A stretch of 64,000 nt of DNA from Salpingoeca rosetta (taxonomy: Eukaryota; Protista; Choanoflagellata), in contig JAWQFM010000017.1 of assembly GCA_033442325.1 (NCBI GenBank), positions 1,140,036 to 1,204,035 of the forward strand, in the 5' to 3' direction. Under the pieces are notes generated by a model. It did not search any database. It was not told the origin of the DNA and worked only from the letters and a program-made list of their open reading frames with translations. The translations under genes and the position numbers were made by a program. Below, in pieces: positions 3,075-26,531 of this stretch. Positions within the stretch are counted from its first letter, which is position 1. The number at the start of each line of letters is the position of its first letter.

Positions 3075-3922
3075 ATGGCACCCGTTTCAGTACACCCACC
3101 ACAGCACAGCCATGCACTTCGATGGCTCTCCACATTGCTCCTTGTTCTTGGCGTTTTCTCTTCTCTTTTGACCACAGGTATGGTGTGTGGATGGTGTCAT
3201 GCAAACTGCGCAGCCGTTGCTTCTTCTTCCTTGTCTCGTGCTTGCTGTTGTGTGTTTTGGTTGTTTTCATCTCTACAACGCAGTCAATACACACATGCTT
3301 GTTTGCATTGCTACTTTCATCAACATGAGCCAACTGCTCTTGTCCCATGCACTGCACACCCCATGTATTGCTTACACACACACACACACACACGCACACT
3401 TGCACACACACACTTGCCCACGCACAGCGGCCGGTTCGGCCATTGTGCTCGCCAACAACTTTGGAACATGTGGCATTGAGCCTTCCCTCGCCATCGGCAA
3501 GTGCGGCGCCGTGCACGTGTCCTTGGACTCATGGGAGCTGCAGCTTCAGGCACCGGCCGACCTGGAATGCAAGTTCTACCACGACAGCGATTGCTCTCAA
3601 GTCGTTTCTTCGGGCCTCTCACCTGACATCTGGAGCACACCATCCTCCTCCATCCTTGCCAGAACAAACGTGCGCTTTTGTAAATGCTTAAATGGCCCTG
3701 ACTGTTGTGCTTTCGTTGGTCGCTTGCTCTGTTGAACTTGCCCGCACACCTTCACAAGCTCTTGACGGTTCGTCTTCTTCGCCTTGCGACACACACACAC
3801 ACACACACACTCACGCACAAACACTCACGCACAACACTCACGCACACACACACACACACACACACTCACGCACAACACTCACGCACACACACACACACAC
3901 TCACGCACAACACTCACGCACA

Positions 3923-3957
<35 letters not shown>

Positions 3958-6900
3958 TCACACACGCATAACGCACACCTTCTCTCCCTCTCTCCCCTCC
4001 CCCTCCAGGTTGGCAAAGGTCGCATGCCCGTGTACTTGCGGTGCGTGGGAACACAGACGGGAACAGAGGTGGTGCTCAAGAACACATGGAACGGGATCAG
4101 CACGATCAACGAGGAAGAGTCCCTGCTTGTTGTCGAGAACCACATTGCATGCGACCCAGATCGTGAGTTGTTCACGCAGTATGTGCTGCAAACCAACTTG
4201 AAACACACCTTGAAACACGGCCTGCTGCCCGCCCTTCTGTGATTCTTGCCCCTGCTCCACCGTTTGTCCCACACACACATACACACACACACACATTGCT
4301 TGTCTTGCTCCTCTTTCTCATCACCCCCCACCCAACAAACACACACATGCACACATTACATCACCCAACACAACACCACCGCCAACAGCTGACCGCGTCG
4401 TGTTCTCGTTGAGCGCGAGCGCAACAAGCGTTGTGGAGGAAGATACACCCTCCATCACCTTCAACGTCAGCAGAACAGGGCCCACCGACGATGACGTGAG
4501 CGTTCGCCTGGCCGCCGTTGATTTCCAGGCCTCGCGCAACGCGGACTACACGCGCGCATCCGCCTCCCGGCTCATCACGTTCGCTGCGGGCCAGACTTGG
4601 GCGCAGGAAACCATCCCCATCCTGGACGATGCCTTTCCGGAGCTTGCAGAGTCGTTTGCGCTTGCCCTGACGCAACCGACCTTGTTGACAGGCTCTGGCC
4701 GCGAGGTTGTGCTTGAGGATGGTGCTGCCGTCGTCCTCATCACCATCCAGCCATCCGATGACCCGCACGGTGTCATTGCTCTCCGCAACCCCAACACCAC
4801 CATCGCCCTGACTGAGCCCCTCTCTGGTGCCACCACCATCACCATCCCGCTCGTGCGCACGGGCGGGACCTTTGGCTCCGTCACTGTGGACTGGATCATT
4901 GACGGCGATGCACAGACCCACGACTTTGACGCGCTGCAAGGGTCTGTCACCTTTGGGTCTGCGGAGGCCGCCGCCAACATCACCCTGCAACTGCGCGCCG
5001 ACAACCAGCCTGAGCTGCTGGAACAAAGCGTGTTCCGGCTGCTCACCGCGAGCAACGGCGCGACCGTTGACGCCGCAAGCGCAGCCCTCACCCTCACGGT
5101 TGACCCAAACGACGACCCACACGGCGTCGTCTACGTGCAGGCAAGCGAGCAGCAGCTCATCATGCACCACACTGGTCAACGCGCGCTGCGCATCCTTGCC
5201 CAGCGGTCTGCGGGCACGCAAGGCGCTGTCAACGTCACGTTCTCCGTCACCTTTGGCACGAGCAACATCATCAGCAACAACCTCGCCTGTCTGCAGCAGT
5301 TTATCATCGCCGACAGTGTCACCATCGCCATCTCACATGGCGCCGCCAGTGCAGAGGCAGTTCTTCCCTTCAGCGACACCGTGTTGCTGGAGCAAGGCGC
5401 CGGGTTTTGCCTGCAGGCAACGGCAGTCGCACTGGCAGATGGCTCCCCTGTCCTCGTGGCGTCGGATTCTTTGTCGCCTCGCCTCAACACATCGCGTGTC
5501 GACGCCCGCGTGGTTGTCGCGCGTGCGTTTGCCAACGGCGTGGTTGGCTTTGCCGGCACAAGCATCAACCAGGCAGAGCCCGCCACCCAGCAGCAGGACA
5601 TCACCATCCTGCTTGTGCGCTCTGGCGGTGGTTATGGTACACTTGACGTGCAGCTTTCTCTCACTGGGAATTCAGAGTACGCCGTGCCTGGCCAGGACGT
5701 GACCCTGTCATCTAACGTCTCCCACTTTGATGCTGGCGACTCCCTCCACGAGCTCACCGTCTCCGTGCACCCCGACAACATCCCTGAGCTTGCCGAACAG
5801 TTCTTCGTCACCGTGGCGGACATTCCGTCCGGCCGCGCCGCCATCGACTCGGACTCCTCTGTTCTCACCGTCACTGTCCCGGTGCGCTGAGATGATGACA
5901 TGGGTTGTTTTTGGAAGTGAAATGGATGTCTCGTGCTCCAATAATTTCCATACACACACACACACACCCAATTTGCATGCATCCGCTTGCACACAAACGC
6001 ACACACACACACTCACATGCACACACACACGTATACATACACACTCTCACAAATGCACATGCACACACATACACACTCACATAAACACATGCACACACTG
6101 TACTGCACTGCAGAAAAATGACGACGCAAATGGCGTGCTTGGGTTTGAGGTGACGGGCTACCGTGTGTCGGAGACGGACCCGAGCGGACATGTGGTGCTC
6201 AACGTGACAAGGACACGCGGGGCGTTCCAGTCTGTGAGCGTGGCGTTTGCCACGAGCGACGGCACGGCGGTGGCCGGGACCAACTACGAGGCGCAGAGCG
6301 GGACGCTTGTGTTTGGGGAAGGGGAGCGGAGCAAGGAGATTGCGGTTGGGGTGCTGGATGCGGGGGCACCGCGGGCGCCTGTGCGAACGCTGACGGTGAC
6401 GCTGGGACAAGTGATTGGCGGGGCGCGGGTGGCGGCCGCATCTGCCACAGCCACCGTCAACATTCAGTCCTGCCACCACTGCAGCTTCAACATCATCGAC
6501 TCGCCGTCCCCGCTCGTGACAGCGGAGCCAGCAGGCACCAACACGGCCGACGTGACGGAGGTGGCTATCCCTGTGCGGCGAACCCCAGACACCTTTGGGC
6601 CCGCCACGCTCCACTGGACGGTGTTTGAGAATGACCCTGCCACTGGCGACATCACTGCCGTGCAGGCGAGCATGGACTTTGTTGACGCCACTGGCGCGGT
6701 GTCCTTCGTGCATGGCCAGCAGGATGCCGTGGTTGTGCTGCACATTCGCAACGACAACGAGCCTGAATTGACAGAGCGCTTCAGCCTGGTGCTCGTCTCA
6801 GTGGACGGTGATCCATCGCTTGGAATCAACGCAACCCTGCCCATCGACATTGTTGCCAACGACCTGTGCTTTGGCAGCTTCTCGTTCTCGGCATACCCTG

Positions 6901-9900
6901 CGGCAGTGACTGTGTATGAGCCCCAGGACCCGTCCAGTGGTGCTCGCGTGCACACCTTCAACATCACACGTGCGCGTGGCACATTCAACAGCGTTCGTGT
7001 CTCGCTGGAGCTGCAACTCCTAACGGCAGGCGACAGCGCTGCAACAAGCGACGACGCTGTTCTGCTCACACCATCTGTTGTCTTCGCCGAGGGCCAGACC
7101 TCTGCTCTTGCGCGCGTCTCCGTCACCAACGACAACATCCCCGAGATTGCAGAGAGCATCATTCTGCGCGCAGCAAGCGTGGCTGTGCTCAACACAAACG
7201 AGACGGTCACCTCAGACCTCGTCACCATCGACGACACGGACGACTACATTGAACTGGTGATTGCGGAGAACGACGACGCGCGGGGTGTTGTGTCCATCCG
7301 CCCGCTCGCCCTCACTGCCAGTGAAGGCGGTGCGCCCTCCGATGTACAGTTCACCCTCACCCGCACACGTGGTGTGTTTGGCGTCGTCACGGTGACGGCT
7401 GGCCTCGTGTCAGTTGCGAGTGGCACTGCTGGCGTGAACGCAAGCAACGTCGCCACTCTCTCGGGCCCGGAGCAAGACGCCTTCCTTCCCATGCCCACTG
7501 TCACGTTTGTCGAGGGCCAAACCGAGGCTATGCTCTCTGTTGGCGTTGTGGATGACGACCTGCCGGAAGTGGACGAACAACTGCGCGTTGTCCTCGTCAA
7601 CACGACCGGTGGCCTAGTCGTCGGTGCCAACGACACGGCTGTGCTCACCATTGCTGCCAGCGACGCAGCGTTTGGCGACCTGTCCATCACCAACGCCTCC
7701 ACCCTTGCTGTGCTGCACGAGTTGGAGGGTGAGGACGCCATGTACGAGCTGGAGGTTCTGCGTGGTGGCGGTGATTTTGGCACCATCACGGTGGAGTGGC
7801 ATCTGGAAGTGGTCACGCCTGGCGACGGTGGTACCACGTCCTCACCCCTCGTCCTTGGCAGTGACATCTCCCCATCGTCTGGGACGTTGACGTTTGCGCC
7901 CGGTCAGCGACGCGCTGTGGTTGCGCTCACCGTGTACGCCGACAACATGCCAGAGACGAACGAGGAGGCCTTGCTCGTGCTGAGCAGCCCGACAAACGGC
8001 GCGCAGCTGCAGGCCAACGCCACGTCACGCCGGGTTGTGATTGAGGCAAACCAGGAGCCGCACGGCGTGGTCTCGCTGGCAGACGCCACCATCATCGTGG
8101 ACGAGGGCGCCGGCACGGTGTCCGTGGCCGTGACGCGCGAGAGTGGCGCCATTGGCCAGATCAGCGTCGATGTCACCGTGCGTGGCGTGTCCGCTGCGGG
8201 CGGTGGTGTGGATTTTGCAGCCACCAACACCACGCTGGTGTTCGCGCCGGGTGTTCGCCAGCTGGCGCACCCCATCACCATCATCGACGATGATATCCCA
8301 GAGCTGGACGAGACGCTGGTTGTGTCGCTCAGCAACCCCACGGGCGGCGCGCTGCTTGGCGCCATCACTCAGACAGAGATCACCATCTTCAACAACGACG
8401 ATGCGTTTGGGCTGGTGCGCGTCGCCAACACCACGCCCGCAGATGTCGCGGCGTTTGACGAGAGCGCAGCAGACAGCAGCATTGTGTTTACAATTGTACG
8501 CGATGCGGGCGCCTTCACCTCCATCTCCGTGCCCTGGTCCCTGCAGCAGGTGGCCGGGTCATCTGCCGCCACGCCCGATTTCGATGTCACCGCTGGTGTC
8601 GTGCAGTTTGCAGAGGGCGAGCGTGTTGCCACCATCACCGTGCACGTGCTCGATGACGACGTGCCCGAGGACGACGAGACGTATCAGCTGGTGCTCAGCA
8701 GCGTCACTGGCAGTGCGCGCGCACATCCGCAGCTTGGTCGCCACAACGTCACCATCGCTTGGAACGACAACGCCTTTGGCATCATCAGCGTGCAGGCGGG
8801 CGCGCGCAGCCAGCGCGTTGCTGAGAGCGATGGCAGCGTCTCCATTCCTCTGCAGCGCACGCAGGGCACGTTCCGCCGTGTTGGTGTCAACTGGGTCATT
8901 GCCGTGGCCACGGTGAGCTCTGGTGACGTGAGCCCCACATCCGGCACCGCGTACTTCGAGCCCGGCAGCGACACCGCCGCCATTGTCATCTCCATCACAG
9001 ATGACGCAATACCAGAGGTTGACGAAGGGTTCACAGTGAGCCTGCAGAGCGTCACCGTTGCCGGTGCCCTGCTTGTGTCCGATTTGAATGCTCTGCGTGC
9101 AGATGTCACAATCGTTGCCAACGACGACCCGCACGGCGTGATCAGCCTGCGCAGCGGCAGCGGCACGCTTGCGCTGACCAGCGGTGGCCTGCGCTCACTC
9201 CGCGTGACACTCGACCGCAGCGGTGGCACCATCCTTCCCATCGACATCACCTTCTCCGTGCTCATGTCACTGCCGCCTGGTGGCGTACAAGCCAGCAGTG
9301 GCAGCGGCGGCGGTACAGCAGAGCGCTCTCCCTGCCAGGCCCAGACCATCGTGTCCAGCCCGCAGACGGTGACCATGGGCGACAAGCTCGCGTCACGCGT
9401 CGTGAGCCTGCTGATTGAGGAGACGGCCGTGCTGGTGCAGGACGCCGTGTTCTGCATTCAGCTCGACTCTGTCGTGCTCTCCCGCGATGGCTCGCACACC
9501 AACACAAGCACGGGCCCGTCACCAAGCTTGGCGGCGTCCATGGATGCCCGTGCACTCAACGTGTCTGTGAGCAGTGCGTATGCCAACGGCCTTGTGGCCT
9601 TTGGCGACACTGCGGGGACCGTGCACGTGACGGAGGCAGCAGACCTTGACGCACCCGAGACACAGCTTGTGCCTGTGGTGCGGAGCGACGGCAGCTTCGG
9701 CGATGTGGCACTGGCGTGGGAGATTGTGCCCTCACACACGGGTGACTTTGACGCTGTGAGTGGGACCGTGATGCTGCCGTCTGGGCAGTCGTTTGCGTCC
9801 ATTCCCATCACCGCCGTGAAGGAGCAAGTGCCAGAGCTTGACGAGCTGTTTCAGCTGCGCCTGACGGGCATCACCAGCGGTACAGCAACGCTGGGCGCCG

Positions 9901-12283
9901 GTGTCAACGACACACGCGTGCAGCTGCTCATCCCCGCCAACGATGATCCGTTTGGCGTGCTTGGGTTTGAGGTGACGGGCTACCGTGTCTCGGAGACAGA
10001 CCCGAGCGGACATGTGGTGCTCAACGTGACAAGGACACGCGGGGCGTTCCAGTCTGTGAGCGTGGCGTTTGCCACGAGCGACGGCACGGCGGTGGCCGGG
10101 ACCAACTACGAGGCGCAGAGCGGGACGCTTGTGTTTGGGGAAGGGGAGCGGAGCAAGGAGATTGCGGTTGGGGTGCTGGATGCGGGGGCACCACGGGCGC
10201 CTGTGCGAACGCTGACGGTGACGCTGGGACAAGTGATTGGCGGGGCGCGGGTGGCGGCCGCATCTGCCACAGTCACCGTCAACATTCAGTCCTGCCACCA
10301 CTGCAGCGTCTTCCTTGATCCTACGCAGGACCTGTTTGTTGGCGAGGAGCCTGCATCCCCTGATCCCGCCGATGCCACAGGCATTGACGTGCGTGTCCTG
10401 CGACAGCCAGACAGCTACGGCTCTGCGCTTGTTGGCTGGCGGGTGGTGCATGCAGGCACCAACACGCTTGCAAGCGACGACTTTGTGGATGCCAATGGCA
10501 CGGTGACGCTGGAGCACGGGGAGACCGAGACGACGCTCCGCCTGCTGCCGCGCGCTGACGCCACCCCAGAAACAGCGGAGGCATTTGAGGTTGAACTCAC
10601 CAGCGTGAGTGGGGACCCGTCTCTCGGCAGTGACGATGTGCTGGAGCCTGTCACGCGCAATGTGCAGCTTGAGCCCAGCGACCAGCCGTATGGGTTGTTT
10701 CGTATCGGCACCGCATATGTGCGCGACGGCAACAGTGGCGCGGTGAACTCTGTTGCCGGTACTGCCGATTCCGTGTCCACACAGGAAGGCGACACGGTGC
10801 AGGTGACCATTGATCGGCAGCACGGCACGCTCGGCGCTGTTGACGTGTACCTGATGCTGCTGTCCCTTGCGGGCGAGGTTCCTGCCGACAACGCTGCAAC
10901 CCCTGGCGATGACATTGCTATTCTGCACAGTGCTGGGATTGGTGCTGTTCGGTTCGCAGATGGGCAGACGCGTGCCAACGCAACGCTTGCCATCATCGAC
11001 GACGGCCTGCCTGAGCTGGACGAGCGTCTGGTGGTCGCCCTGTTGAATGCCACCATTGTCGGAGACACCCTAGCAGCGAGCATGGATGCGCGGCGTGTGC
11101 GTGTGTCCAACACGACGCGTGAATCTGGCCTCACCATTGCTGTCGAAGAGAACGACGACGCACATGGGGTGTTTGAGCTCTCTGCACCGTCCCTCGCCAA
11201 CGAAACGTTGAGCGAAGGTGCCGTGGCCACTGTGACTGTTGAGCGCAGGCGCGGCACGTTTGGCGCTGCTGGTGTCTCTCTCGTGCTTTCTTCAGTTGTT
11301 GATGACGACAACACGGCGACAACGGACGCTGTGCTCTCGCAAACAGACATCACATTTGTGGAAGGCGAGAGCTCTGTGCAGGTGACCCTGACCGTCCTGG
11401 ACGATGCTGTGCCCGAGGATACAGAGTCGTTTGTGCTGTCCTTGTCTGCGGGCAGCGTGACTGGCGGTGCGCGGCTGTCACCAAACGCGTGGGCCACACA
11501 GGCGGCGTTCTCAGTTGCGCCCAACGATGATCCCTTTGGCGTGTTCACGCTCGCGCAGCCGCTGTACAGTGTGGACGAGCCAGCCAACGTCACTGTCACG
11601 GTGCTGCGGTCTGCTGGACTGTATCGCACCGTGTCCATCCCGTGGCAGGTGAATCAGAATGCCACATCTCCAGATGTCGCACCAAGCAGCGGAGTGGTCG
11701 TGTTCGTGCCGGGCCAGACAGAGGCGTATGTGCAGCTCACTGTCATCGATGACAGTATTCCTGAGGACCGTGAGGACGTGGTATTCACGCTGCAAGCGCC
11801 CACGTCGCCCGTTGCACGCATCGAGCGCAACACCACCACCATCCGCATTGCCGCCAACGACTTTGTCAACGGCGTGCTTGAGTTTGAACCTGGTCTGAGT
11901 GTGCTACGTGTGGGCGAGGACGTGGGCTTGTTTTCCATCACCGTGCGCCGGCGTGGCGGTACGCAGGGCACCGTGTCTGCGGCGTACGAGACGCTTGACC
12001 TGACTGCAACGCGCAGCAGCAACGACTACGCGTATGCCCAGGGCAGGGTGGAGTTTGCGCCTGGCGAGACGGAGCAGACCATTTCCCTCATTGTGGTTGA
12101 CGATGACGTTCCAGAGGATGATGAGCGGTTTCTTCTCGTCCTCTCTGACGCCCAGGGCGGCGCCGTTCTTGGTCTCTCCTCCCAACGTAAGCACGCGCGC
12201 ATGTGCGTGTGTGTGTGTTTATGTTCGTGTTGGTGTGTGTGTGTGTGTTGTGCTTGTGTGTATATGTGTGTGGTTGTGCTTGT

Positions 12284-12314
<31 letters not shown>

Positions 12315-15300: not shown

Positions 15301-18300
15301 ACGCCGTGATGTACGCCGTTGTGTCTGCGGAGACAAGCGAGGGTGATGACGTGACTTCACATGTTGGCGTCAACAGCACCGGGCACATCCACGCCACGCA
15401 GGCACTGGACCGCGAAAGTTACGCGTTTGTCGTTGTCACTGTTGCTGCCACAGATTTTGCACCGCTGCGCAAGACCTCGCTGGCTGTTGTGAACGTGACG
15501 GTGGTGGATGTGAACGACAATGCGCCCGTGTTCGACAGCAGCGTTGCAGATGGGGTGCTGGTGTTCGTGCGGGAGGAGGACGCGCCAGGCACCCTGGTCA
15601 CAGACGAGCTCACGGCACAGGACGCGGACCAGGGCGACAACGCCCGCATCACGTACAGCATCGTGAGTGGAAACACGGGCAATGCGTTCAGCATCGACGC
15701 AGACACGGGCGTGGTGACGCTTGCCGCACAGCTCAACGGCAGCGTTGTGGACGAGTACGTGCTTGGTGTTGAGGCGCGTGACAACGCGGCGCACGTGAGT
15801 GACCAGCTGTCTTCGGTTGTGAGCGTGAACGTGAGCGTGGTGTACTTTGGGGCGCCCGTGTTTGGGGCACCGTCGTACCGCGGGAACGTGAGCGAGGACG
15901 CAGGCGTGGGGACGGGTGTTGTGCGTGTGTGTGCGACGGCACAGCACGACGGAGCAGACCAAGGGATTGACTTTGCGATTGTGAGCGGGAACGTTGGGGG
16001 TGTGTTTGGGCTTCGCATGGGCAGCGACAACGTGAGCGCGGAGGTGTATGTGGCGGGGCCGCTGGACCGCGAGACGCGCGGGGTGTATGTGCTTGGGGTG
16101 GTTGGGCGGGACCGAGGCCCGCTGAGGAAGCGGAGCGGGGTGGGCGTGCGTGTTGATGTGCTTGATGTGAACGACCACGTACCGGTGGTTGTGGGTGCCG
16201 ATGGCGGGGAGAGCGGTGGGTGGCCCGAGCCTGTTGTGCGGATGGAGGTGCGCGAGGAGGCGAGCGTTGGGAGCGTTGTTGGGGTGATTGTGAGCGAGGA
16301 TGGTGATGCTGGAGCGTATGGGACGGTGACTGTGTCTGTTGGTGCGACGCGTGTTGGCGGCGGGGACTTTGGAGGGGTGTTTTCGCTTGACGGCGGGAGC
16401 GGGCGGGTGCTCGTTGCTGGCGTGCTTGATGGGGCTGAGACGCCCGAGTATGTGGTTGAAGTGATTGCGCGGGATGGCGGGGGCCTGACCTCCAACGCCA
16501 CCCTCATCATCACCGTCATCTACTTCAACGGGCCCCGGTTCAACGCCACTTCCTACGCTGCAACAGCAGCGGAAGACGTGGTTGTAGGTGCCACCATCGT
16601 CAACGTCTTTGCGGTTGCGCGTCACGACCAGCTAGATCGCACCATCGACTACAGTCTCGCAGACTCGCTTGGACTGTTCGACGTGACTGCTGATGGCCGC
16701 ATTGTTGCTGCTGCGCCACTTGACTACGAGACAGCCACATTGCACGAACTGACGGTCGTGGCGACTGATCACGGCCCATTGCGCAAGTCCAGCAACGTCA
16801 CTGTCGTGGTCACTGTGACTGATGTGAACGACAATGCACCCGAGTTTTCGCCGCCCTCCTACACATTTACCATTCGGGAAGACGCGAGCGAAGGCGTTGT
16901 TGTTGGCAGCGTGAATGCGTTTGACCTTGATTCTGGCGCCAACGCCGCTCTGCACTTTAGCACCGACTCGCCCGCATTTGCTGTTGCTTCGCCCTCAAGC
17001 AGCGGTGTCACGACCGTTGACGTTGTGGTGACGGCATATGGGGCTGTAACCCTGGACGGCCTGCAAGAGCCAACAATTACCTTGACAGTGACTGCCAGGG
17101 ACGGTGGCAGCCCTGCCCTCTCCTCCACGGCGACAGTGACCATCGATGTGACGCTTGTGCCGACGGTGCAAGCGCCATACTTGAAGCTGTACAACACGCT
17201 CAGCGCAGCGTCTGGGTTTATCCCAGCCGAGTTTAGCAGAGACGTGTCGTCGCTCGCGCTGGTGTCGGACTTTGACACGCGTCACGGCGTGTGGGACATC
17301 AGCGTGGATGACGGGTCCACGTGGACACGTGTCAACACTGGCGCGCGATGGCGTGACAACACGGCGCTCGTGCTGCGGACGGGGGAGAGCAGCAGCACTC
17401 TGTTGCGGTTTGTGCCCACGGAAGGATTTGCTGGCGTTGCCACGGTGCATGTGCGTGCGTACAACGGGGACAACGCCACCATCACTGGCGCTGCTGCAGG
17501 TGCTGCTGCCGATGCACTCGTTGACGTGGGCGCAAGCCCCGATACCTTGCATGATGTCAGCGGCAATACCGCCCTGGGCGTTGTGTTCGTCGCCGCCCCG
17601 CTCAGCAGCGTGCAAGTTGCAGAGAGCACGAACGTGACCGTGGACCTGCCAAACCTGCTTGAAGACACATCGCTGCTGCAGAATGTCGGCGTGCAGCTGA
17701 CATCACTCCTGCAAGGTCACCTGCAATTTGCCACGGTGAGCGGCCCCGCGACGGGCATGGCTGCGCTCACCACTGGCGGCTGCGATGGTACCGGTACATG
17801 GTGTAACAGCACGGCCGTTGCTGTGATGTTCCCAGACGATGTCGACACGCTCGTGCAGCCGCGCGATCACGGCATCGTCGTTGAGAGCGTATCGGAGAGC
17901 GCCGGTGTGTGGCAGAGCCGAGCAGCGTCCGTGACTGGGTTTGAGGAGACACTTGTAGGCGATGTGGTGCCGCTGCAGTCGCTGCTGCGGTTTGTGCCGG
18001 CGGCAGAAGAGAATGGTCTGTTTGAGATGGTGGTGCGCGGGTGGCATGGAAAGCTGCATGCGCTCGCACGGCAAGCGAGCACGACAGCCCACACCATCAC
18101 CATTCGCCAGAGTGTGGTCGCAGTTGCAGATGCCCCACGTGCGCTGACTGCGAACGTGACGCTGGCGCCCGTGCCATACGAAGTGACAGCGCAGACGGCG
18201 AACGGATCGCGCGTTGACGAGAGCATTGCTGGGCATGCGGTGGATGCAGATGGGCAGGCCATTGGCCTTGCTGTTGTTGGCGTCGCAAACTGTATCACAA

Positions 18301-21300
18301 CAACAGCCACAGCAACAAGCAGCAGTAACGGTGACAGATGCCGCGGATCGTGGCAGTATCTGCTTGATTCGACGCAGGAGTGGCGTGCGTTCCCACTGGA
18401 TGCCAGCGACCAGAAGGCGGTGCTGCTGGCGCCCCACTCGCGTGTGCGCTTCGTCCCACTGCCCAACTACTTCTGGCCACGCGGCAATGCCTCGGTGTGG
18501 CTGCGTGTGCGCTACTGGGATATGAGCGTGGGCCGAGCCGGTGACACGGCTATGCTTGCAGACGCCTCGGCACCGCAGCAGCTGCTGTTCCCAACAGCCT
18601 TCAGCAGCCGCGTTGTGAGCGTGTTTGTGGACCGCCTTGGCTGTGACGGTGAGGTTGGCAGCCAGCTGTCCGTCGATGCGTGCGGGGTGTGCGGCGGAAA
18701 CGGCAGCGCGTGCGCTGGGTGCGATGGCGTGCTTGCGTCCAATGTGCAGGAGGATGCGTGTGGGGAGTGCGGTGGTGATGGCTCGTCCTGCATGGGGTGC
18801 GACCTTGTTCCGCTGTCCAATGCGCAGGTGGACGAGTGCGGCATCTGTGGCGGTCAGAACCTGAACAAGGACTGCGCTGGCGTGTGTTTTGGGGTGGCGT
18901 CGCGAGACGACTGTGGCGCCTGCTTTGGCGGAGACGCAGAGCGCCAAACACCCGACCTCGACAAGGATTGCGATGGCGTGTGCTTTGGCGCTGCGTTTGT
19001 GGACGACTGTGGCGCGTGTGTTGAAGGCGCAACGGGCCTGAGTGCCAACTACAACAAGGACTGTGCTGGCGTGTGTTTTGGTGGCGCGCAGATCAGCGAC
19101 GTGTGTGCGCTGCAAGGCGTGTCGTATTGCGGTGAGCCCGTGCTCGACTGCAGTGGTGAGTGCTTTGGTTCCCGTATCGTGTCGAGCTGCGGTGATTGCG
19201 TGCAGCCGGACAACGCGACGCTCCTTGACTGCGCCGGCGTGAGTGGCGTGACACCTCGTGTCGTGCCCGTATCCTCTGCCTCTGTGCGCTTCACAATCGC
19301 TGGGAGCGGTTTCCCGCCAGATGTCGGCGCACGCGACGTGACCTGCCGTGCCGTCAGCAGCAGTGGCCGTGGCAGCGTCACTGGATATGGGTGGGTGGCG
19401 TCTTCGACCACGATCACGTGCGTGTTCTCGACGCTGACCGTCGGTGATTATGACCTTGAGGTGGAGCTGCACGGGTCTGCCCTGTCATCGTCACCATCAT
19501 CATCATCATCATCGTCACTTGCCGTTGCTGTGGTGAGTGATGCTGCATCTGTTGGCGCCCCGCCCACGACCAACGTCAATGCGTTCCCTTACGACACGCA
19601 GACGTTCAACCTCTTTGCCGTGACGCCGTCCTCTGCCCCACTTGCCAATTTGAGCGAGGCCGTGGACGCTATTCGCGTGTCCGGCGCGCTGTCGTCGTTT
19701 GGCCCTGCAGACGAGACCACAGGGTGCCTGTTTGTGACGAGTGACACGGGCCTGCTCGGTGTGGTCTCTGGGCAGTGGTTTGCGCGGCGTATCAACTGCG
19801 TCGCTGGGCCGCTGCAGTTTGCGCGACAGATTGAGATTGACATTGAGGATGACGAGCAGCAAGCGTTCACCACGCTGGATGCTGTGGAGAGCCACCTGCG
19901 CCAGGCCCGCCCCGACATTGCCAGCGTCACCTTCACTGTGAGTGGTGATGGCGACGCGGCCTCGGGCAAGCCGCTGCCCACCGGCAGCAGCGTGCTGGTG
20001 GAGTTCTCAGCGGACCTGAACCAGATTGCGTGCTTGGAGGCATCGATGGCCACCATCAACGCCCTGTTTGGCCTCTTCCCACGCGTCTCCAGTGGAAGTG
20101 CTGGAAGTGCTGCTGATGCTGATGCAAATGCGGTCCCCACGCTTGTTGGCAGTGACGTCCTGTCACTGTCATCTTCCGAGGTCGTGTGTGCCGTGCCTTC
20201 AGTGCAGCGCTCAGCGACCATGGAGGTGATGCTGGTGCACCAGGGTGTGGTGGCGGCTGCTTCAGGCACCACGCCCACTGTCACGTTTGTGCACCGCGCT
20301 GCACAGGCCAGTGCCCGCTTCTCTGCCTCTGGCCGCCACCTTGTGGTTACGTTTGACGTTGGCGTGCTGCCTGTGGAGCCGTGTGCCGCAGTGTTCACGG
20401 CGGCATCACGGAGCGCGCTGGATGCAACCGCGTGCACGTGGACGACGCACACACTGACCGTTTCCCTGGGCCGCAACGCAACCCTGCTGCCTGGCGACCG
20501 CGTGTGGTTTGCACCTGTGGACACCAGCGGTGATGTGGCAGCGGACACCCTCAGCACAGGCGCAGGCATTCACGTGGCCGGTGAGCTGCACAGCTACGCC
20601 GTGTCTGGGTCTGTCGTCGTTGGCCTGCCTGATGACTACCAGCCCTCCATCCCCCGCTTCACGCTGCCGCAACAAGTACGGGCGTGCGCAGGGCTGCTGC
20701 TGGATGCCAGCGCATCACACGTGGCAGCCGGGCGTCCAGCCACGTTCCACTGGAGTGCACTGGCCCACGGAGGCGAAGATACGACCGCGCTTGAAGCGCA
20801 CCTTGCCAGCGTGTCTGGTAGCAGCGATGGCCCTGAAGGCGTCGTGGTGGAGGTTGCAAGTTCCCTCCTGCGTGCGGGCACAACATACACGTTTGGCTTG
20901 GCCATTGAAGACGCGCTGGGCGTGCGCAGCAGCGTCGTTACGGTGGACACGACGGTGATGGTACAGGGCAGCGTTGGCGGTGGTGCACAACAGGTCGCGT
21001 CGCTTGAGATCCTTGGTATTCCGCCTGTCCTGCATGCGTCGTCAGATCTCACCGTCCGTGTGCGCCCCGTTGCGCCGCTGCACGGGAACACGTGTGCGGG
21101 CGAAAGCCTTGGCACAGCGATTGCTGCTGCTCTTGGTGCTGCGAGCGGCACCAGCGCAGATGTGCAGTACTGCTGGCAACTCTCGCCGGCCCGCGCGTCC
21201 AATGGCGGAGCGCCGCTGGCTGTTGCTTCTGCATGTGCGCCAACACCGTGGTTTACAGTTTCGGGCACACTGCTGCTGCCCCATCAGCAGCACACGCTGA

Positions 21301-22888
21301 CGGTGACGGTGCGAGTGACATCGGAGGATGCCGAGGCACCCGTGCTTGCGTCCACCAGCACCGTGTTTGACGTCGTGCCAACGCCGCTTGAGGCGAGCGT
21401 GCTTGGCGGTGACTTGCTGGGCGGGCGGCGCACGGTGCCATTGGACGCCACCATCAGCTTGGATGCGTCTGTGTCCTCTGATCCCGACGCCACGGACGAG
21501 CTGGAGCTGTTTGGCTGGCGGTGCGAAGACATTGCCCTGAGCCAGCCATGCAGCACGACAGCAAACGGCAATGTGCCCAGCGTGCTGCTCTTCCCTGCCA
21601 CGCCGCAGCTGTCGCAGGCTGCGGCAGACTTTGGTGCCGGCAGCTACCGCTTCACGGCCACGTATCGCAAGGGCGGCCGCTTTGTGGACGCACGCGCCGT
21701 GGTGGAGGTGGTGGAAGCGCCAGTCGCACCCCAGCTGCGCGTGTTTGGGGTGGCGCAAGGGTATGTGCCCACGCCCACAGAGCACGTGTTCCTGCCCCAC
21801 GCCGTGGTCAACCCGTCCCTGCCCGTGACGGTTGTCGTGGAAGTGACACACGCGTCCGCGCTCGCATCTGCGACATGGTCCGTGGTCGCCGACAGCAGCA
21901 GCGGCAGCGGTGGGAATGAAGATGAGGAGCCGTTGGCGTGGCTTGACTTGGAGGCAACCGCTCTGACGCCACTCACGTACACGCAGGCAGAATTGGCTGC
22001 ACTGGTGACGTTGGACGACGGCACCCAGCGCACGTTCCTGCAGCTCACCCTGCCCCCAGATGCTGTCGTGTCTGGCGCAACGTACCGCTTTAGGTGCACG
22101 GCAGCGACGGCCGCTGAGCACGGGTTTGCCGAGGCGACGGTGGTGGGCAACCACGTGCCGTCTGGTGGCGCCCTGGATGTGGTGTCGTGGACAATGACGA
22201 ACAATGGCATGGGCGTGACACGCGCTCGCCTGACTGCTCAGGGCTGGGGTGACGCTGACCTGCACTATCCGCTGATGTATCGCTTTGGCGTTGGCGCTGA
22301 CCCAGCCACGCGCGTGTGGCTGACGACGTTTGATTACAGCAGTCGCCTCTCTGGTGTGGTGCTGCCTGCTCCCGCAAGCAACACCACCACGCACGTGTCT
22401 GTTGTGCTGCAGGTGCGCGACAGGCTTGGGGCCACCGCGGAGTCGACGGTGGAGGTGGCGACCAGCACAGCAACAACAGCCGGCACAGGAACAACCCCAT
22501 CGGTGGATGCGGCTGCGTTGGCAGCCAACGTGAGTGCTGCGTTGGACGCCGGCAACTGGCCGCTGGCGGTGCGTGTTGGCGTTGAAGCTCTGTGGATGAC
22601 AGGCGACTCCACAAACGCTGCAGTGGTGGTGGACACGGTCGCCGGCGTTGTCTTGGACAGCGTGCGCGCTGCCCTGTCGCTTCAGTCTGGCTCCTCATCG
22701 TCTTCCTCCTCTGCCTCTTTGACAGACGGGGAAGCAGACTTGTTGCTGTCAGCAGTGGCTGTCGTTGCAAACAGGCGTGCGTTCCTGTCCGAAACAACAC
22801 GCGGTCGTGTGGGTGAGTTGACGGAACACATTGGCGCCATCCTCATTCCGGCTGCGGAGGAGGAAGGCCTGCTCAACAGCAACAACAA

Positions 22889-22919
<31 letters not shown>

Positions 22920-25415
22920 CGGAGGAGGGCGAGCGGCGCTGTGGATGGCGGGTACGGCAGCAGCAGCAGCGTCACGCCCCAGCAGGGCCTTGCGATGACT
23001 GACATTTATTCGAGCGCCATTGCGCTTGACTCGTTCACGGCCACCAACGCCGCCCTCAAGGCGCGGCTGAACACACTGCTGCAAGTGATTGCGCGCGTGG
23101 AATGTCGTCGCCTGTCCTTCAAGGCACGGCCGTACCAGCTGGAGAATGACCTGTTCCACTTGGAGGTTGCCGTGCTCTCTGGCGCCAGCGTGCAGACTGT
23201 CGACACGACGCAACTCGACTACGGCAGCGACTTTGAAGCGCGCTTCGAGCGGTGGGCGTGCGATGACCCCGCCCCTGCAAGCCGGTGCGCTGGCGTGTGC
23301 AGTGCCGCTGTTCTCTTCAACGCGGACATGACAACGGCGTTTCAGGACGAGCCTGCGTTCCGTCGCGCGAGCCCGCTGCTTGACATGCGCTTCTACGACC
23401 AGACCTCCTTGCACACGGTGCAGGTTGCGTCGCTTGACCCGGCGCTGTCGCTGTTCCTGCCCATCACCGAGGCAGCGCCAGCTGGCACGACAGACAGTTC
23501 ACCTCAGCGTCGCAGAAGGAGCAGCAGTAGCAGCAGCAGCAGCGATGACGTGGCTGCGCACGACCGCGTGAACACACCACATGTCGTCACCAGCAGCAAC
23601 GTTGACAGCAACAGCAGTAGCAATGGCGCGAGCAGGGATGGGAGCGATGCTGTGCGCGTGCGTCGGGAAGGCCCCTCTGTGTCAGCACCGGAGTTTGAGT
23701 GTCTTGTGTATGACGCGTCGCAGCATCTGTGGTTGGCGGATTCCCGCTGCAGCTACTTTGCGCCCAACACGGGGGAGCAAGGCGTGGACCAGCTTGAGTG
23801 CCGCTGCACAGCTGGTAACCTACAGGTGGCCGGGTACTACTACGCTTCCTCAACGACGGGCGAGGTGAATGTCACGGTGCCAGCAGCACCTTCAGGTGAC
23901 GTGCTTGCCTACCACCTTCGCGCGTACACATACGAAACGGAGACGAATGCCGAGTCTGCGGCGTGGCTGACGGGCTTTGTGGGCACATTCTACCAGTCCA
24001 TGGTGCAGTTGCTCTCCCTGCAGGACAGTCAGGTGGCAGGCGTCGAGGTTGTGTCTGTCATCAACGGCACGGGCAACCGGCAGACGCTGGTGGTGGACTT
24101 TTATCTCGTTGAGCCTGACGGCAACGGCGGCAATGCGACGGTGCTGGACGGGTATGTTGAGGACCTCAACACCTTGATTGACACGCGCCAGGCACGGTTC
24201 GTGTACGACTCCACGACGTTTGAGCTGTACAACGTGACCATGGTGTCTGGTGGCGGAAACACAGGCGGAAGTGGCAGCAGCGGCTCGCTCGGTTCTGGCT
24301 TCTGGGTGGGCATTGCGTTTGCCATTGCCGCCGCCCTGGCCATGCTCGTGGCGCTCGTGCTGCTGCTGCAGGGGCGAATTGGCGGACGCGAAGGAAAGGC
24401 GAAACTCGGCGGCAAGAGCGTGGACGACGAGAGCACGCTGGAGATGGTTGATCTTGGACGGCGGTCGCTTGCCGCGTCGTCCAACACCAGCAGAAGGTCC
24501 TCTGTTGCGCAGCTGCTGCCGCGGTTCATGCGACGCACCAGCAGCGTGGTCATGCCGGAGCAGCTGGTGGAGGTGGACGAGGAAGGCGAGGAGGACGAGG
24601 GCGCGCAACTCACTGGCGACGACGCACGTGATCAGGTGGCCCAAACCGCCTCCACGCGCCTTGCATGGACACGGCGCTCATCCTTGTCGACAATGGCCAC
24701 GGCTACAACAGCAGCAACAGGCGCTGGTGACGGTGACGGCGAGCATCAAGTGAGCGGGGGTGCTGCTTCCACTCCTGCAACTACACCTGCGCGCCGGCTC
24801 TCCGTTGCATCTGCGACGTCACCGCAAGTGGACGAGACTGAATTCAGCAAGGGCGGCAGCAGCGATCGCACTGGTGGTGGTGATGATGATGATGATGGCG
24901 CCAGCGGCACGCACGGGGCCGCACTGCCTTTCTCTCCGCGAAGCAGCGCGTCTTTGGGTGGCGATGGCCAACAACAACAACAACAACAACAACAACAACG
25001 ACAGCGGCAAGACCCGCTGGCACCACTGACATCCACGACAACACCACCTCGGGGCATGCCTCCACGTGTGCCGCGACTGCCGTCGTCGTCATCATCATCC
25101 TCGTCGTTGTCGGCTGCGCCTGGTGGAACTGTGCCCGCACCGTCTGCTCTGACACTGCGACCAGCCCTTCGCGTGCCGTCGCTGCGATCGCGACAAGGCC
25201 CCGGTGGTTCTGAGCCGAGCACGCCTGGTACGCTGCCGCAGTTGCGCCCAGGCATCCGCGCACCACAGAGCTTGCCACGGCTGCAGCCACGTGCGCTCCC
25301 TCGCGTCAACCGTCCACCGCCGCCGCGTCGGCCATCCCAACAGCAGCAGCAGCGAACAGTGGTGGCACCGATTCCGGAGGAGAGCGATGCTGATGCCAAC
25401 GAATCCCAGGCATGA
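3075..25415 (+). CDS. Giant (~7,000 aa) type I membrane protein: Calx-beta repeats, EGF, cadherin repeats, Cys-rich repeats, IPT, REJ/GAIN-GPS-like region, single TM
   Basis: Proposed exons 3075-3177, 3428-3669, 4009-4162, 4389-5881, 6114-12186, 12466-25415 (all GT-AG, 21,015 nt = 7,004 aa + stop). Signal-peptide-like start (WLSTLLLVLGVFSSLLTTA). About 21 DDxxPExxE / NDDxxG Calx-beta repeats; 2 EGF (CANNATCVDG..., DINECANVTC...); DxNDN/LDRE cadherin motifs; REJ motifs (LDASVSSDPD, YPLMYRFG); TM FWVGIAFAIAAALAMLVALVLLL at ~24300-24370. The three small 5' exons are less certain than the rest. Confidence 0.85.
6131..6485 (+). repeat. Intragenic direct repeat, copy 1 (355 bp, one Calx-beta domain)
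   Basis: Near-identical to 9953-10307; about 4 substitutions seen by eye. Confidence 0.95.
9953..10307 (+). repeat. Intragenic direct repeat, copy 2 (355 bp)
   Basis: Near-identical to 6131-6485; offset 3,822 nt. Confidence 0.95.
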
Positions 25416-25976
25416 TACCGAGGAAGATGGCAGTGCTGGCTGGTGTGTTTGTCATGGTGCTGTTGTTGCAACTGTTGCTGTGAGAGAGGGAGAGGATGTG
25501 TGTGTGTGTGTGTGTGAGCGTGTGTGTTGTGCATGAACGAGAGGATGTGTTGAGTGAGAGAGTGAGAGAGTGAGAGAGAGAGAGGACCAGTGTGTTGTGT
25601 GTGTGTTTGGAATTGAACTGACTTTCAGACCTTGCCGCGGTTGGGGCAATACGCGTGTGCTTCATTTCAAACCTTCAAACAGTGTTTTCTTTCTTCTTTA
25701 CACCTCATTTCCTTTTGTATGTTGCATGGAGGGTTGTGCTTTGTGTGTTCTTGTTGGTCGTCAGATGTTGGGCATCTGAGCAGATACAAACACAGAAGAT
25801 ACAATCTTCTTCCTGTGTCACACAGCAGGAGTTTCCATGAGAAGTCAAGCAAGCGGACAGTGGTTGGTGCGCATCAAAAACAACACAAACCACGATTTCA
25901 CGCATCGGCAAAGTTGACCACGCCCCACAAACCCACACTCACACACACACAAACACACACGCGCGCGCACCCAAGC

Positions 25977-26379: not shown

Positions 26380-26461
<82 letters not shown>

Positions 26462-26467
26462 AGCTGT

Positions 26468-26531
<64 letters not shown>

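What the first reader, a model, noticed from the sequence alone, without database searches (positions are those of the whole stretch)
3075..25415. Giant mosaic surface receptor combining ADGRV1-like Calx-beta array, cadherin repeats and a polycystin-1-like REJ/GAIN module on a single TM
Seen: one ~7,000-aa reading frame, in order: signal peptide, Cys-containing N-domain, ~21 Calx-beta, 2 EGF, 8 cadherin, 3 adhesin-like repeats, DxCGxCGG repeats, IPT, REJ, GAIN/GPS-like, SEA-like, one TM, cytoplasmic tail. Known: in animals these modules are divided among separate Ca2+-dependent adhesion or mechanosensory proteins (ADGRV1/VLGR1 Calx-beta, CDH23/PCDH15 cadherins, PKD1 REJ-GAIN). It does not match the choanoflagellate cadherin families I know (lefftyrin, coherin, hedgling). 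Inference: a long Ca2+-stiffened tether or mechanosensor, e.g. an inter-microvillar collar link, prey-capture or substrate adhesin.
Basis: partly seen in the sequence, partly recalled or inferred. Interest (0 to 1): 0.85.

Follow-up and report, generated by a model that had tools for sequence, protein, structure and literature searches.

The report
Giant Calx-beta/cadherin/REJ-GAIN surface protein
This is a real, already annotated 7,004-residue single-pass surface protein of the choanoflagellate Salpingoeca rosetta; its membrane-proximal half matches giant sponge cadherins, while its N-terminal array of 21 Calx-beta domains was found in no relative.

Summary
Window 3075-25415 (+) is one six-exon gene of Salpingoeca rosetta, annotated as EGD75586.1/XP_004992043.1 'NOTCH2 protein', 7,004 aa, and inferred to be PTSG_06655.

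Confirmed by tools:
- 21 Calx-beta, 2 EGF and 8 cadherin repeats
- DxCGxC repeats, TIG and REJ
- a GAIN fold (VIA Z 18.4 to CELSR1; the family GPS profile also finds ADGRV1 GPS motifs)
- a SEA-like juxtamembrane domain
- one TM helix and a Cys-free tail

The GPS lacks the His-Leu|Thr cleavage triad. The protein's only three Rx[KR]R sites lie in disordered GAIN loops.

The interpretation needs correcting. Cadherin and REJ/GAIN are not always in separate proteins in animals. Sycon, Oscarella and (per Zhu 2013) Amphimedon 'Fat4/Dachsous-like' cadherins carry the same collinear cassette: three repeats, Cys-rich repeats, TIG, REJ, GAIN, TM.

No other hit in the searches made combines Calx-beta with cadherin.

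Published RNA-seq shows expression in thecate and swimming cells and 5-70 fold lower expression in colonies.

Most likely this is a long Ca2+-dependent tether or adhesin of solitary cells, not a polycystin- or GPCR-type signaller. Function is inferred. I could not lay reads. This stretch was also noted a second time in this scan (s1-440419).

The parts
3075..3435 (+). Exon 1 and start of exon 2: signal peptide (aa 1-37; hydrophobic core aa 18-36). Includes intron 1 (3178-3427).
   Evidence: Kyte-Doolittle scan. Exon joins reproduce P0001.
3436..4393 (+). Cys-containing N-terminal domain (aa 38-168) of unknown fold, spread over exons 2-4. Includes introns 2 and 3.
   Evidence: No Pfam hit at E<=1. 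No homologue among fetched relatives.
4394..12173 (+). Calx-beta repeats 1-20 (aa 169-2684).
   Evidence: Self-built HMM finds 21 repeats. Pfam PF03160 at 5.6e-23 and 1.9e-133. 14 of 21 repeats keep the acidic DDxxPExxE motif.
12187..12465 (+). Intron 5: a TG-microsatellite-rich stretch that is open in frame, with GTAAGC...ACACAG boundaries.
12468..13772 (+). Roughly 435-aa insert (aa 2690-3124): two Pro-free Ala/Gln/Leu-rich helical arms flanking a roughly 150-aa globular middle. Likely a coiled-coil hairpin.
   Evidence: No Pfam hit. Composition and heptad scan. The fold itself was not tested.
13773..14090 (+). Calx-beta repeat 21 (aa 3125-3230), in the same exon as the cadherins, REJ and TM.
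   Evidence: 6.2e-31.
14139..14633 (+). Two EGF domains (aa 3247-3320) followed by a Cys-rich spacer (to aa 3411).
   Evidence: Pfam EGF/hEGF, 2 stretches each.
14634..17144 (+). Eight cadherin repeats (aa 3412-4248). The DxNDN linker motif is present only after EC1, 3, 5 and 7.
17154..18635 (+). Three 'G.W...W...LRFVP...WD' repeats (aa 4252-4745) belonging to no described family.
   Evidence: HMM finds two here, and three in sponge and S. helianthica relatives. 40% identity to Sycon across the last repeat and the Cys-rich repeats. No Pfam or PDB match.
18636..19235 (+). Cys-rich DxCGxCGG / CxGVCFG repeats (aa 4746-4945).
   Evidence: Motif scan. Direct repeats. Weak ADAMTS_CR_3 hit at 0.013. 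Corresponds to the 'VSP' box of Zhu 2013 (inference).
19239..21242 (+). TIG/IPT domain (aa 4947-5035) and further beta-rich region before REJ.
   Evidence: Pfam TIG 2.9e-4, 2 stretches.
21243..22481 (+). REJ domain (aa 5615-6027).
   Evidence: Pfam PF02010 at 1.2e-32.
22509..23846 (+). GAIN domain (aa 6037-6482): a helical subdomain A and a beta-sandwich subdomain B ending in a GPS-like motif, ...ECRCTAGN-LQVAGYYY (aa 6431-6482). It has two long disordered loops that carry RRRR (6173), RRRR (6370) and RVRR (6419).
   Evidence: AF2 model. Foldseek top 8 hits are all GAIN. VIA Z 18.4-14.2 to six GAIN structures. Profile hit to ADGRG3 GPS at 2e-4. The family GPS HMM finds ADGRV1 GPS. Basic sites.
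23901..24251 (+). SEA-like beta-alpha-beta-beta-alpha-beta domain (aa 6501-6617), with no G|SVVV motif.
   Evidence: AF2 model with pLDDT 78. VIA top hits: Gpr126 SEA Z 9.2, TMPRSS6 SEA 8.5, SorCS2 membrane-proximal region 7.8, MUC16 SEA 7.7.
24300..24368 (+). Single transmembrane helix (aa 6634-6656).
   Evidence: Helix 604-630 in the model.
24369..25415 (+). 348-aa cytoplasmic tail and stop codon. The tail is Cys-free, rich in Ser/Pro/Gln, with a polyQ run and PxxP-type stretches. It has no MYND finger.

Best explanation
The locus encodes one type I membrane protein of 7,004 aa.

Its membrane-proximal 2,750 aa form a conserved choanoflagellate/animal cassette: three W..LRFVP repeats, Cys-rich CG repeats, TIG, REJ, GAIN, single TM. 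Sponges carry this cassette at the base of giant 'Fat4/Dachsous-like' cadherins. Salpingoeca helianthica, Nematostella and amphioxus carry it on shorter REJ proteins.

In S. rosetta the cassette bears 8 cadherin repeats. Beyond them, uniquely so far, it bears 2 EGF, 21 Calx-beta domains, a coiled-coil side arm and an unknown tip domain.

Shown: the gene structure, the domains, the GAIN and SEA-like folds, the homology of the cassette, and expression in solitary cells.

Inferred:
- The ectodomain is an extended filament of the order of 200 nm. It would be Ca2+-rigidified at most Calx-beta junctions and at every second cadherin linker, and flexible at the Ca2+-free linkers.
- It projects from thecate and swimming cells to bind substrate or theca material, neighbouring microvilli or prey through its distal domains.
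- The REJ-GAIN-SEA stack is a sturdy, non-autoproteolytic stalk.
- The three Rx[KR]R sites in exposed GAIN loops may be cut by a furin/kexin-type convertase. The halves would then stay together non-covalently and could be shed under load.
For: One gene:
- Exon joins reproduce the annotated protein, with GT..AG at all five introns.
- No stop codon between 5727 and 25415.
- Calx-beta 21, the cadherins, REJ, GAIN and TM lie in a single exon.

Domains.

GAIN.

SEA-like.

Topology.

Cassette homology:
- Sycon, 40% identity over about 390 aa and collinear hits.
- Oscarella.
- Nematostella, S. helianthica and an environmental cadherin+TIG+REJ+MYND protein.
- Three-repeat unit conserved.
- Literature: PMC3620549.

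Ca2+ motifs: 14 of 21 Calx-beta repeats have an acidic DDxxPExxE motif, which I recall as resembling the Ca2+-site loop of the Na+/Ca2+-exchanger CBD1 (recalled, not aligned here). DxNDN follows EC1, 3, 5 and 7 only.

Expression, from PMC4054682 Additional file 7: PTSG_06655 has FPKM 3.2-6.2 in three thecate samples and one swimmer sample, against 0.09-1.1 in chain and rosette colonies. [quoted passage not shown]

Basic sites: the only three Rx[KR]R in 7,004 aa fall in low-pLDDT GAIN loops. A polybasic run sits at the same loop in four relatives that also lack HL|T.
Against: - No binding partner, localisation or phenotype is known, so the function is inference from parts.
- Ca2+ binding was not tested. 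Seven Calx-beta repeats and four cadherin linkers lack the motifs.
- The link between P0001 and PTSG_06655 is inferred. It rests on the InterPro domain list, on the neighbouring gene PTSG_06656 (TPR+PH) matching window 25632-28706, and on a read/FPKM ratio implying a transcript about 8.5 times longer than that neighbour.
- Convertase cleavage is a motif-level guess.
- A 355-nt tract that is 98.9% identical within the array could mean the assembly, and so the Calx-beta count, is slightly off.
Confidence: 0.62

Rival explanations
1. It is a polycystin-1 / adhesion-GPCR-style mechanosensor. Force on the long ectodomain would expose or release the last GAIN strand as a tethered agonist, or trigger regulated proteolysis that signals through the tail.
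For: - Genuine REJ followed by GAIN, as in PKD1.
- Sponge relatives keep a canonical C-x-H-N-HL|T-QFAV site.
- The non-canonical strand motif N[VL]xVAG[FY] is conserved among several relatives, so it is under constraint.
- Polybasic sites in GAIN loops.
- A long tail with PxxP-type stretches.
Against: - There is no 7TM, 11TM or PLAT domain to receive an agonist; only one TM.
- The His at -2 and the Thr/Ser/Cys at +1 are absent.
- A 115-aa SEA-like domain separates GAIN from the membrane.
- The tail has no recognisable signalling domain and has lost the MYND finger of its relatives.
Confidence: 0.15
2. It is mainly a structural coat, matrix or theca-building component. A giant glycoprotein would be shed from the surface after cleavage at the basic sites, analogous to the Calx-beta arms of the sponge aggregation factor, rather than acting as a cell-anchored adhesin.
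For: - Highest expression is in thecate (substrate-attached, theca-secreting) cells.
- Extracellular Calx-beta arrays form the MAFp4 arms of the sponge aggregation factor (PMC11670116).
- Rx[KR]R sites lie close to the membrane.
- There are many N-x-S/T sequons.
Against: - Swimming cells, which have no theca, express it equally (SwM 5.0 FPKM).
- A conserved TM and a 348-aa tail argue for a membrane-anchored role.
- There is no evidence of shedding.
Confidence: 0.15
3. The architecture is partly an artefact: a fused gene model or an assembly error that inflates or joins the arrays.
For: - A 355-nt tract with only 4 mismatches is shared by Calx-beta 5 and 15, with abrupt borders.
- The window contains a 1,017-N gap elsewhere.
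- I have no read-level check.
Against: - A 19.7-kb ORF without a stop cannot arise by chance.
- Calx-beta 21, cadherins, REJ, GAIN and TM share one exon.
- The cadherin-to-REJ order is reproduced in independently assembled sponge genomes.
- The read/FPKM ratio in PMC4054682 fits a transcript model of about 21-23 kb.
- The near-identical tract is in frame (spacing 3,822 nt), as expected for gene conversion.
Confidence: 0.05

Closest known systems
Sponge giant cadherins with a TIG-REJ-(GAIN)-TM-MYND end: Sycon ciliatum LOC135823227; Oscarella lobularis 'protocadherin Fat 4-like' XP_065844796; Amphimedon 'dachsous' XP_003386184 of Zhu et al. 2013
   Same: The cassette is collinear and homologous: cadherin array, three W..LRFVP repeats, Cys-rich CG repeats, TIG, REJ, GAIN with GPS, single TM. 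Identity to Sycon is 40% over about 390 aa.
   Different: The sponge proteins have 36 or more cadherin repeats and no Calx-beta, EGF or coiled-coil insert. They have a Pro/Thr-rich linker in place of the SEA-like domain. Sycon has a canonical HL|T GPS. They carry a cytoplasmic MYND finger. S. rosetta has 8 cadherins, 21 Calx-beta, a degenerate GPS and no MYND.
Polycystin-1 family (PKD1, PKD1L1-3, PKDREJ, sea-urchin suREJ proteins)
   Same: A REJ domain immediately followed by a GAIN/GPS domain next to the membrane. As I recall, not checked here, sea-urchin suREJ1 is also described with a single TM.
   Different: No PLAT domain, no 11-TM or channel-like region, no HL|T cleavage triad, and a SEA-like domain inserted before the TM.
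ADGRV1/VLGR1 (Usher 2C adhesion GPCR)
   Same: A very long extracellular Calx-beta array ending in a GAIN domain. The best-scoring Calx-beta relatives are vertebrate ADGRV1 (E about 1e-137), and the family GPS HMM recovers ADGRV1 GPS motifs.
   Different: No 7TM, no pentraxin/LamG or EAR repeats. It has cadherins and REJ, which ADGRV1 lacks. S. rosetta separately encodes a Calx-beta + GPS protein, PTSG_07638.
CELSR/Flamingo and the tip-link cadherins CDH23/PCDH15
   Same: CELSR joins cadherins, EGF and a GAIN domain; mCELSR1 CADH9-GAIN is the top structural match (Z 18.4). PCDH15's membrane-proximal EL region (6c10, EC11-EL) also appears in the SEA-like search (Z 6.1). As I recall, PCDH15 and CDH23 place a SEA-like membrane-adjacent domain before a single TM and have some Ca2+-free linkers.
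   Different: CELSR is 7TM with HormR and LamG. The tip-link cadherins have no REJ, GAIN or Calx-beta.
Sponge aggregation factor MAFp3/p4
   Same: An extracellular array of many Calx-beta domains (29 in MAFp4) used in Ca2+-dependent adhesion and allorecognition (PMC11670116).
   Different: The aggregation factor is secreted, has a wreath domain, and has no cadherin, REJ, GAIN or TM.

Membership tests
Cadherin superfamily | Tandem extracellular cadherin repeats | tested here: met
   8 repeats; Pfam PF00028 at 1.3e-100; own HMM.
Cadherin superfamily | Ca2+-binding DxNDN linker motif between successive repeats | tested here: inconclusive
   Present after EC1, 3, 5 and 7; absent after EC2, 4, 6 and 8.
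Sponge/choanoflagellate cadherin-TIG-REJ-GAIN cassette family | Collinear W..LRFVP repeats, CG repeats, TIG, REJ, GAIN and single TM, C-terminal to cadherins | tested here: met
Sponge/choanoflagellate cadherin-TIG-REJ-GAIN cassette family | Cytoplasmic zf-MYND finger | tested here: not met
   No Pfam hit, and the tail has no cysteine. Present in Sycon, Oscarella, S. helianthica and P0191.
Polycystin-1 family | REJ domain | tested here: met
   PF02010 at 1.2e-32, 113 bits against a cut-off of 25.
Polycystin-1 family | GAIN fold with GPS motif after REJ | tested here: met
   VIA Z 18.4-14.2 to six GAIN structures. Foldseek 6.8e-7. Profile at 2e-4.
Polycystin-1 family | HL|T/S autoproteolytic triad | tested here: not met
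   The sequence is CRCTAGN-LQVAGYYY, with no His or Thr/Ser/Cys at the turn.
Polycystin-1 family | PLAT domain and 11 TM segments | tested here: not met
   Only one TM. No PLAT or PKD_channel in Pfam.
Adhesion GPCR (ADGRV1-like) | 7TM domain directly after GAIN | tested here: not met
   One TM, with a SEA-like domain in between.
Adhesion GPCR (ADGRV1-like) | Calx-beta array in the ectodomain | tested here: met
   21 repeats.
SEA domain | Juxtamembrane beta-alpha-beta-beta-alpha-beta sandwich | tested here: met
   Model with pLDDT 78. The top VIA hits are SEA domains of Gpr126, TMPRSS6 and MUC16, with Z 9.2-7.2, which is a middling range.
SEA domain | G|S[VI]VV autoproteolysis motif; sequence-level membership | tested here: not met
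   The beta2-beta3 turn reads NGTGNRQ. No Pfam SEA hit.
Lefftyrin / coherin / hedgling cadherins | PTP+FN3+LamG, cohesin, or Hh-N+vWA domains respectively | tested here: not met
   None reported by Pfam on any piece.

The most novel reading that the evidence does not exclude
The conserved cadherin-TIG-REJ-GAIN single-pass cassette may be an ancient choanozoan force-gated proteolytic module. It would be autoproteolytic (HL|T) in sponges and replaced in the S. rosetta lineage by convertase sites in GAIN loops plus a SEA-like domain. The S. rosetta protein would then be a premetazoan tether that unites, in one molecule, the parts later split among CELSR, PKD1, ADGRV1 and the Usher tip-link and ankle-link cadherins. 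For example, it could link collar microvilli or anchor thecate cells.
Probability: 0.15. Interest if true: 0.75.

Novelty: new variant of a known kind. Interest (0 to 1): 0.5.

Why it matters
Choanoflagellate cadherins are a central case for how animal adhesion proteins arose, yet almost none has a known function.

Three points come out of this analysis.

First, a whole juxtamembrane cassette (repeats, TIG, REJ, GAIN, TM) is shared between choanoflagellates, three sponge classes, a cnidarian and amphioxus. It therefore predates animals as a unit. Its GAIN domain had not been named in the one paper I found that draws the cassette (PMC3620549).

Second, within the family the GPS site is canonical in some members and degenerate in others. 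Those lacking HL|T more often carry a polybasic loop site and, in several, a SEA-like domain. This gives a natural experiment on what GAIN cleavage is for outside GPCRs.

Third, S. rosetta has fused to the cassette a Calx-beta array of the kind used by ADGRV1 and by the sponge aggregation factor, and it switches the gene down in colonies.

As far as I know S. rosetta is genetically tractable, so tagging and knockout should be feasible. If the protein proves to be a collar or substrate tether, it would give a functional anchor for premetazoan Ca2+-dependent adhesion.

Tried and rejected
No junction or coverage evidence was obtained. From then on no letters of 5986-6047 were sent to any search tool; later calls used P0001 or coordinates from 6114 onward.
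- **Accession search** in papers for EGD75586, XP_004992043 and F2UFL8: nothing.
- **Nichols et al. 2012** (the cadherin catalogue) is not held, so I could not see how that paper classed this gene.
- **The protein-atlas search** was busy or errored on every try.
- **Pfam on single pieces** found nothing for the N-domain, the coiled-coil insert, the GAIN region or the tail.
- **W..LRFVP repeats**: a profile against PDB and per-member Pfam scans gave only noise-level hints: Big_9, Cadherin_5, CshA_repeat at E of 0.007 or weaker. 'Adhesin-like' is therefore a resemblance, not a membership. Their presence in sponge, cnidarian and other choanoflagellate relatives speaks against a recent bacterial acquisition.
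- **Foldseek on the SEA-like model alone** gave no hit at E<=0.001; VIA was needed.
- **Monosiga orthologue**: none surfaced in my three protein searches. The Monosiga link rests on Zhu 2013 alone.
- **'NOTCH2' as a description**: rejected. The name comes from the two EGF domains only.
Full report
**What is there**

The window is Salpingoeca rosetta DNA. A protein search with the C-terminal third of the long ORF returned a 100% identical 7,004-aa entry, 'NOTCH2 protein [Salpingoeca rosetta]' (P0001). Its accessions are EGD75586.1, XP_004992043.1 and UniRef F2UFL8.

tblastn placed P0001 on the window in six pieces. A search over candidate splice sites found one solution that translates exactly to P0001. 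The exons are 3075-3177, 3428-3669, 4009-4162, 4389-5881, 6114-12186 and 12466-25415, and all five introns are GT..AG.

'One reading frame' is really six exons, the last two of 6.1 and 13 kb. The ORF from 5727 to 25415 has no stop, because intron 5 is open in frame.

**Domain map (P0001 numbering)**

- An HMM grown from one repeat finds 21 Calx-beta domains: 20 from aa 169 to 2684 and one at 3125-3230. Pfam agrees.
- Between repeats 20 and 21 lies a 435-aa insert with no Pfam match. It has two Pro-free helical arms around a globular middle.
- Then come two EGF domains and a Cys-rich spacer, and eight cadherin repeats.
- Next are three repeats with a G.W...W...LRFVP...WD signature, then five strict DxCGxC motifs with further CxGVCFG units.
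- A TIG domain follows. It is marginal here, at 21.2 bits against a cut-off of 20.9, but strong at the same place in relatives.
- REJ scores 1.2e-32.
- A hydropathy scan finds only two hydrophobic segments, aa 18-36 and 6638-6656. The protein is therefore type I with a 348-aa Cys-free tail.

**The GAIN call**

Pfam sees no GPS or GAIN, so I tested this claim three ways.

1. A full-library HMMER search with aa 5600-6660 gave 46 relatives. Nine of them, aligned over the post-REJ region (A1), share invariant Cys and Trp positions and end in a C..W...W..C....CxC block. The A1 profile hits the GPS region of solved adhesion GPCRs: ADGRG3 7qu8 at E 2e-4, and ADGRF1.
2. An AlphaFold2 model of aa 6030-6660 built with A1 has mean pLDDT 65, with structured parts at 70-90. 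It shows eight helices, then a beta-sandwich. Foldseek's top eight PDB hits are all GAIN domains, with CELSR1 8vy2 at 6.8e-7 and BAI3, BAI2, latrophilin-1, GPR110, latrophilin-3 and Gpr126 behind it. An independent all-against-all VIA search gives CELSR1 Z 18.4 (270 aligned, rmsd 4.0), Gpr126 17.2, BAI3 16.7, GPR110 16.3, latrophilin-3 14.9 and CD97 14.2. These hits cover both subdomains.
3. An HMM of only the family's GPS block recovers two further groups among the fetched proteins: the GPS of vertebrate ADGRV1, and canonical CxCxHL(T/S)xFA motifs in other REJ proteins.

The GAIN call is therefore supported.

The cleavage chemistry is not. The turn before the last strand (LQVAGYYY in the model) reads CRCTAGN-L-Q, with no His at -2 and no Thr/Ser/Cys at +1. 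Sycon has CQHNHL|TQFAV. A subgroup shares the non-canonical N[VL]xVAG[FY] strand with S. rosetta: P0017, P0191, and P0015 in part.

**The SEA-like call**

Modelled alone with three relatives, aa 6496-6622 gives pLDDT 78 and a beta-alpha-beta-beta-alpha-beta topology.

Foldseek finds nothing below 1e-3. VIA's top list, however, is dominated by extracellular SEA or SEA-like membrane-proximal domains:

| Match | Z |
|---|---|
| Gpr126 residues 375-510 | 9.2 |
| TMPRSS6 82-210 | 8.5 |
| SorCS2 952-1066 | 7.8 |
| MUC16 SEA | 7.7 and 7.2 |
| dystroglycan complex chain (8yt8_O 595-710) | 7.4 |
| IA-2 | 7.1 |
| HAT SEA | 6.7 |
| PCDH15 EC11-EL | 6.1 |

The Z values are middling, so this is fold-level support only. 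There is no G|SVVV motif.

This domain is present in S. rosetta, two environmental relatives and amphioxus. In the sponges a Pro/Thr-rich linker takes its place.

**Relatives and literature**

- The Sycon ciliatum protein LOC135823227 (7,311 aa) has 36 or more cadherin repeats, then TIG, REJ and a MYND finger. It aligns at 40% identity with S. rosetta over the last W..LRFVP repeat and the Cys-rich repeats.
- An Oscarella lobularis 'protocadherin Fat 4-like' protein has the same end.
- The three-repeat unit occurs three times in both sponges and in Salpingoeca helianthica P0188. That protein is 2,895 aa, carries REJ and MYND, and has no cadherin by Pfam. The unit occurs two or three times in Nematostella LOC5506859 (TIG and REJ) and in environmental cadherin+TIG+REJ+MYND proteins.
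- Branchiostoma has a 2,398-aa member.
- Zhu et al. 2013 (PMC3620549) drew 'VSP, IPT, REJ, MYND' boxes on the Amphimedon 'dachsous' XP_003386184. They reported that region in two Monosiga EC-rich proteins and in a Branchiostoma floridae protein.

The cadherin-plus-REJ combination is therefore neither unique to S. rosetta nor absent from animals.

What I did not find elsewhere is the Calx-beta fusion. Among 96 giant proteins hit with aa 2580-4760, none but P0001 lists both PF03160 and PF00028. This negative is limited by the tool's length window, its word filter, and fragmentary transcriptomes.

The N-domain, the coiled-coil insert, the spacer and the tail have no match among the fetched relatives.

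**Expression**

In the supplementary tables of Fairclough et al. 2013 (PMC4054682), one gene, PTSG_06655, lists cadherin, Calx-beta (IPR003644), EGF and Ig E-set. The next gene, PTSG_06656, lists TPR and PH. The gene just downstream in the window (25632-28706) is TPR and PH.

The reads-per-FPKM ratio of the two genes in sample ThA1 is 8.5. That fits a model of about 21-23 kb next to one of about 2.7 kb (my arithmetic). I therefore take PTSG_06655 to be this gene, as an inference.

Its FPKM values are:

| Sample | Cell type | FPKM |
|---|---|---|
| ThA1 | thecate | 6.1 |
| ThM | thecate | 3.2 |
| ThAM | thecate | 6.2 |
| SwM | swimmer | 5.0 |
| CCM | chain colonies | 0.09 |
| RCA1 | rosette colonies | 0.17 |
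| RCA2 | rosette colonies | 1.1 |
| RCAM | rosette colonies | 0.75 |

**Mechanism**

The shown facts are the architecture and topology above. The rest is inference.

Fourteen of the 21 Calx-beta repeats keep an acidic DDxxPExxE block. I recall this as resembling the Ca2+-site loop of the Na+/Ca2+-exchanger CBD1 domain; I did not align the two here. The cadherin DxNDN linker motif is present after EC1, 3, 5 and 7 only, which confirms another first-stage note.

With about 35 beta-sandwich modules of 4-4.5 nm each, the ectodomain could span roughly 200 nm (my estimate). It would be stiff where Ca2+ sites are kept and hinged where they are lost.

The REJ-GAIN-SEA stack would then be a stalk rather than a switch. 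There is no cleavage triad, no polytopic membrane domain, and a domain sits between GAIN and the TM.

One unplanned observation may matter. The only three Rx[KR]R motifs in 7,004 residues (RRRR 6173, RRRR 6370, RVRR 6419) all sit in the two long low-confidence loops of the GAIN domain. A polybasic run stands at the same alignment position in P0015, P0030, P0016 and amphioxus P0026. All of these lack HL|T, whereas the two sponge proteins lack the polybasic run. Convertase cleavage in a loop of an intact fold would leave the two halves associated non-covalently, as I recall for Notch S1. This is a hypothesis from motifs only.

**Verdict**

- The novelty claim must be lowered. The gene is annotated. 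It falls within the set of 29 cadherin-domain proteins cited in PMC4054682. It has been profiled by RNA-seq, and its cadherin-REJ core has sponge counterparts already figured in a paper.
- What remains new to my knowledge:
  - the demonstration of a GAIN domain in this cadherin family, with canonical and degenerate GPS variants;
  - the SEA-like insertion;
  - the clustered basic sites;
  - the lineage-specific fusion to a 21-domain Calx-beta array with a coiled-coil side arm.
- Function is unknown and testable.

Noticed in passing
window 6131-6485 vs 9953-10307: A 355-nt tract shared by Calx-beta repeats 5 and 15 has only 4 mismatches and abrupt borders. The copies are 3,822 nt apart, in frame, and the first copy begins 17 nt into exon 5. 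It looks like recent gene conversion within the array, or a local assembly error.
   Followed up: partly
window 22915-22926, 23506-23517, 23653-23664 (aa 6173, 6370, 6419): The only three Rx[KR]R motifs of the 7,004-aa protein cluster in disordered loops of the GAIN domain. A polybasic run is conserved at the first loop in four relatives that also lack the HL|T site.
   Followed up: partly
window 14634-17144: The cadherin DxNDN Ca2+-linker motif strictly alternates: present after EC1, 3, 5 and 7, and absent after EC2, 4, 6 and 8.
   Followed up: yes
window 12468-13772: A 435-aa Ala/Gln/Leu-rich insert with a roughly 150-aa globular middle sits between Calx-beta 20 and 21. The HMM shows repeat 20 ending and repeat 21 starting complete, so the insert lies between repeats, not inside one. 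It has no homologue in the fetched relatives.
   Followed up: partly
window 25632-28706 (+): The downstream gene has a kinesin-light-chain-type TPR array plus a C-terminal PH domain. It matches PTSG_06656, which in PMC4054682 is also high in thecate samples and near zero in colonies.
   Followed up: partly
introns at window 3178-3427, 3670-4008, 4163-4388, 5882-6113, 12187-12465: At least four of the five introns (not checked for intron 1) are built largely of CA/TG microsatellite, which reads as THTH... or CVCV... when translated. One of them (5986-6047) tripped the reads-tool filter.
   Followed up: no
PMC4054682 supplementary tables (not in this window): S. rosetta separately encodes PTSG_07638, annotated with a GPS domain plus Calx-beta. 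An ADGRV1-like combination therefore exists elsewhere in the same genome.
   Followed up: no
window ~36000-38000: A run of 1,017 N (assembly gap) lies in a 2-kb bin that reads 28% GC. Long GC-rich minus-strand ORFs at 50.5-62.6 kb suggest another very large gene.
   Followed up: no
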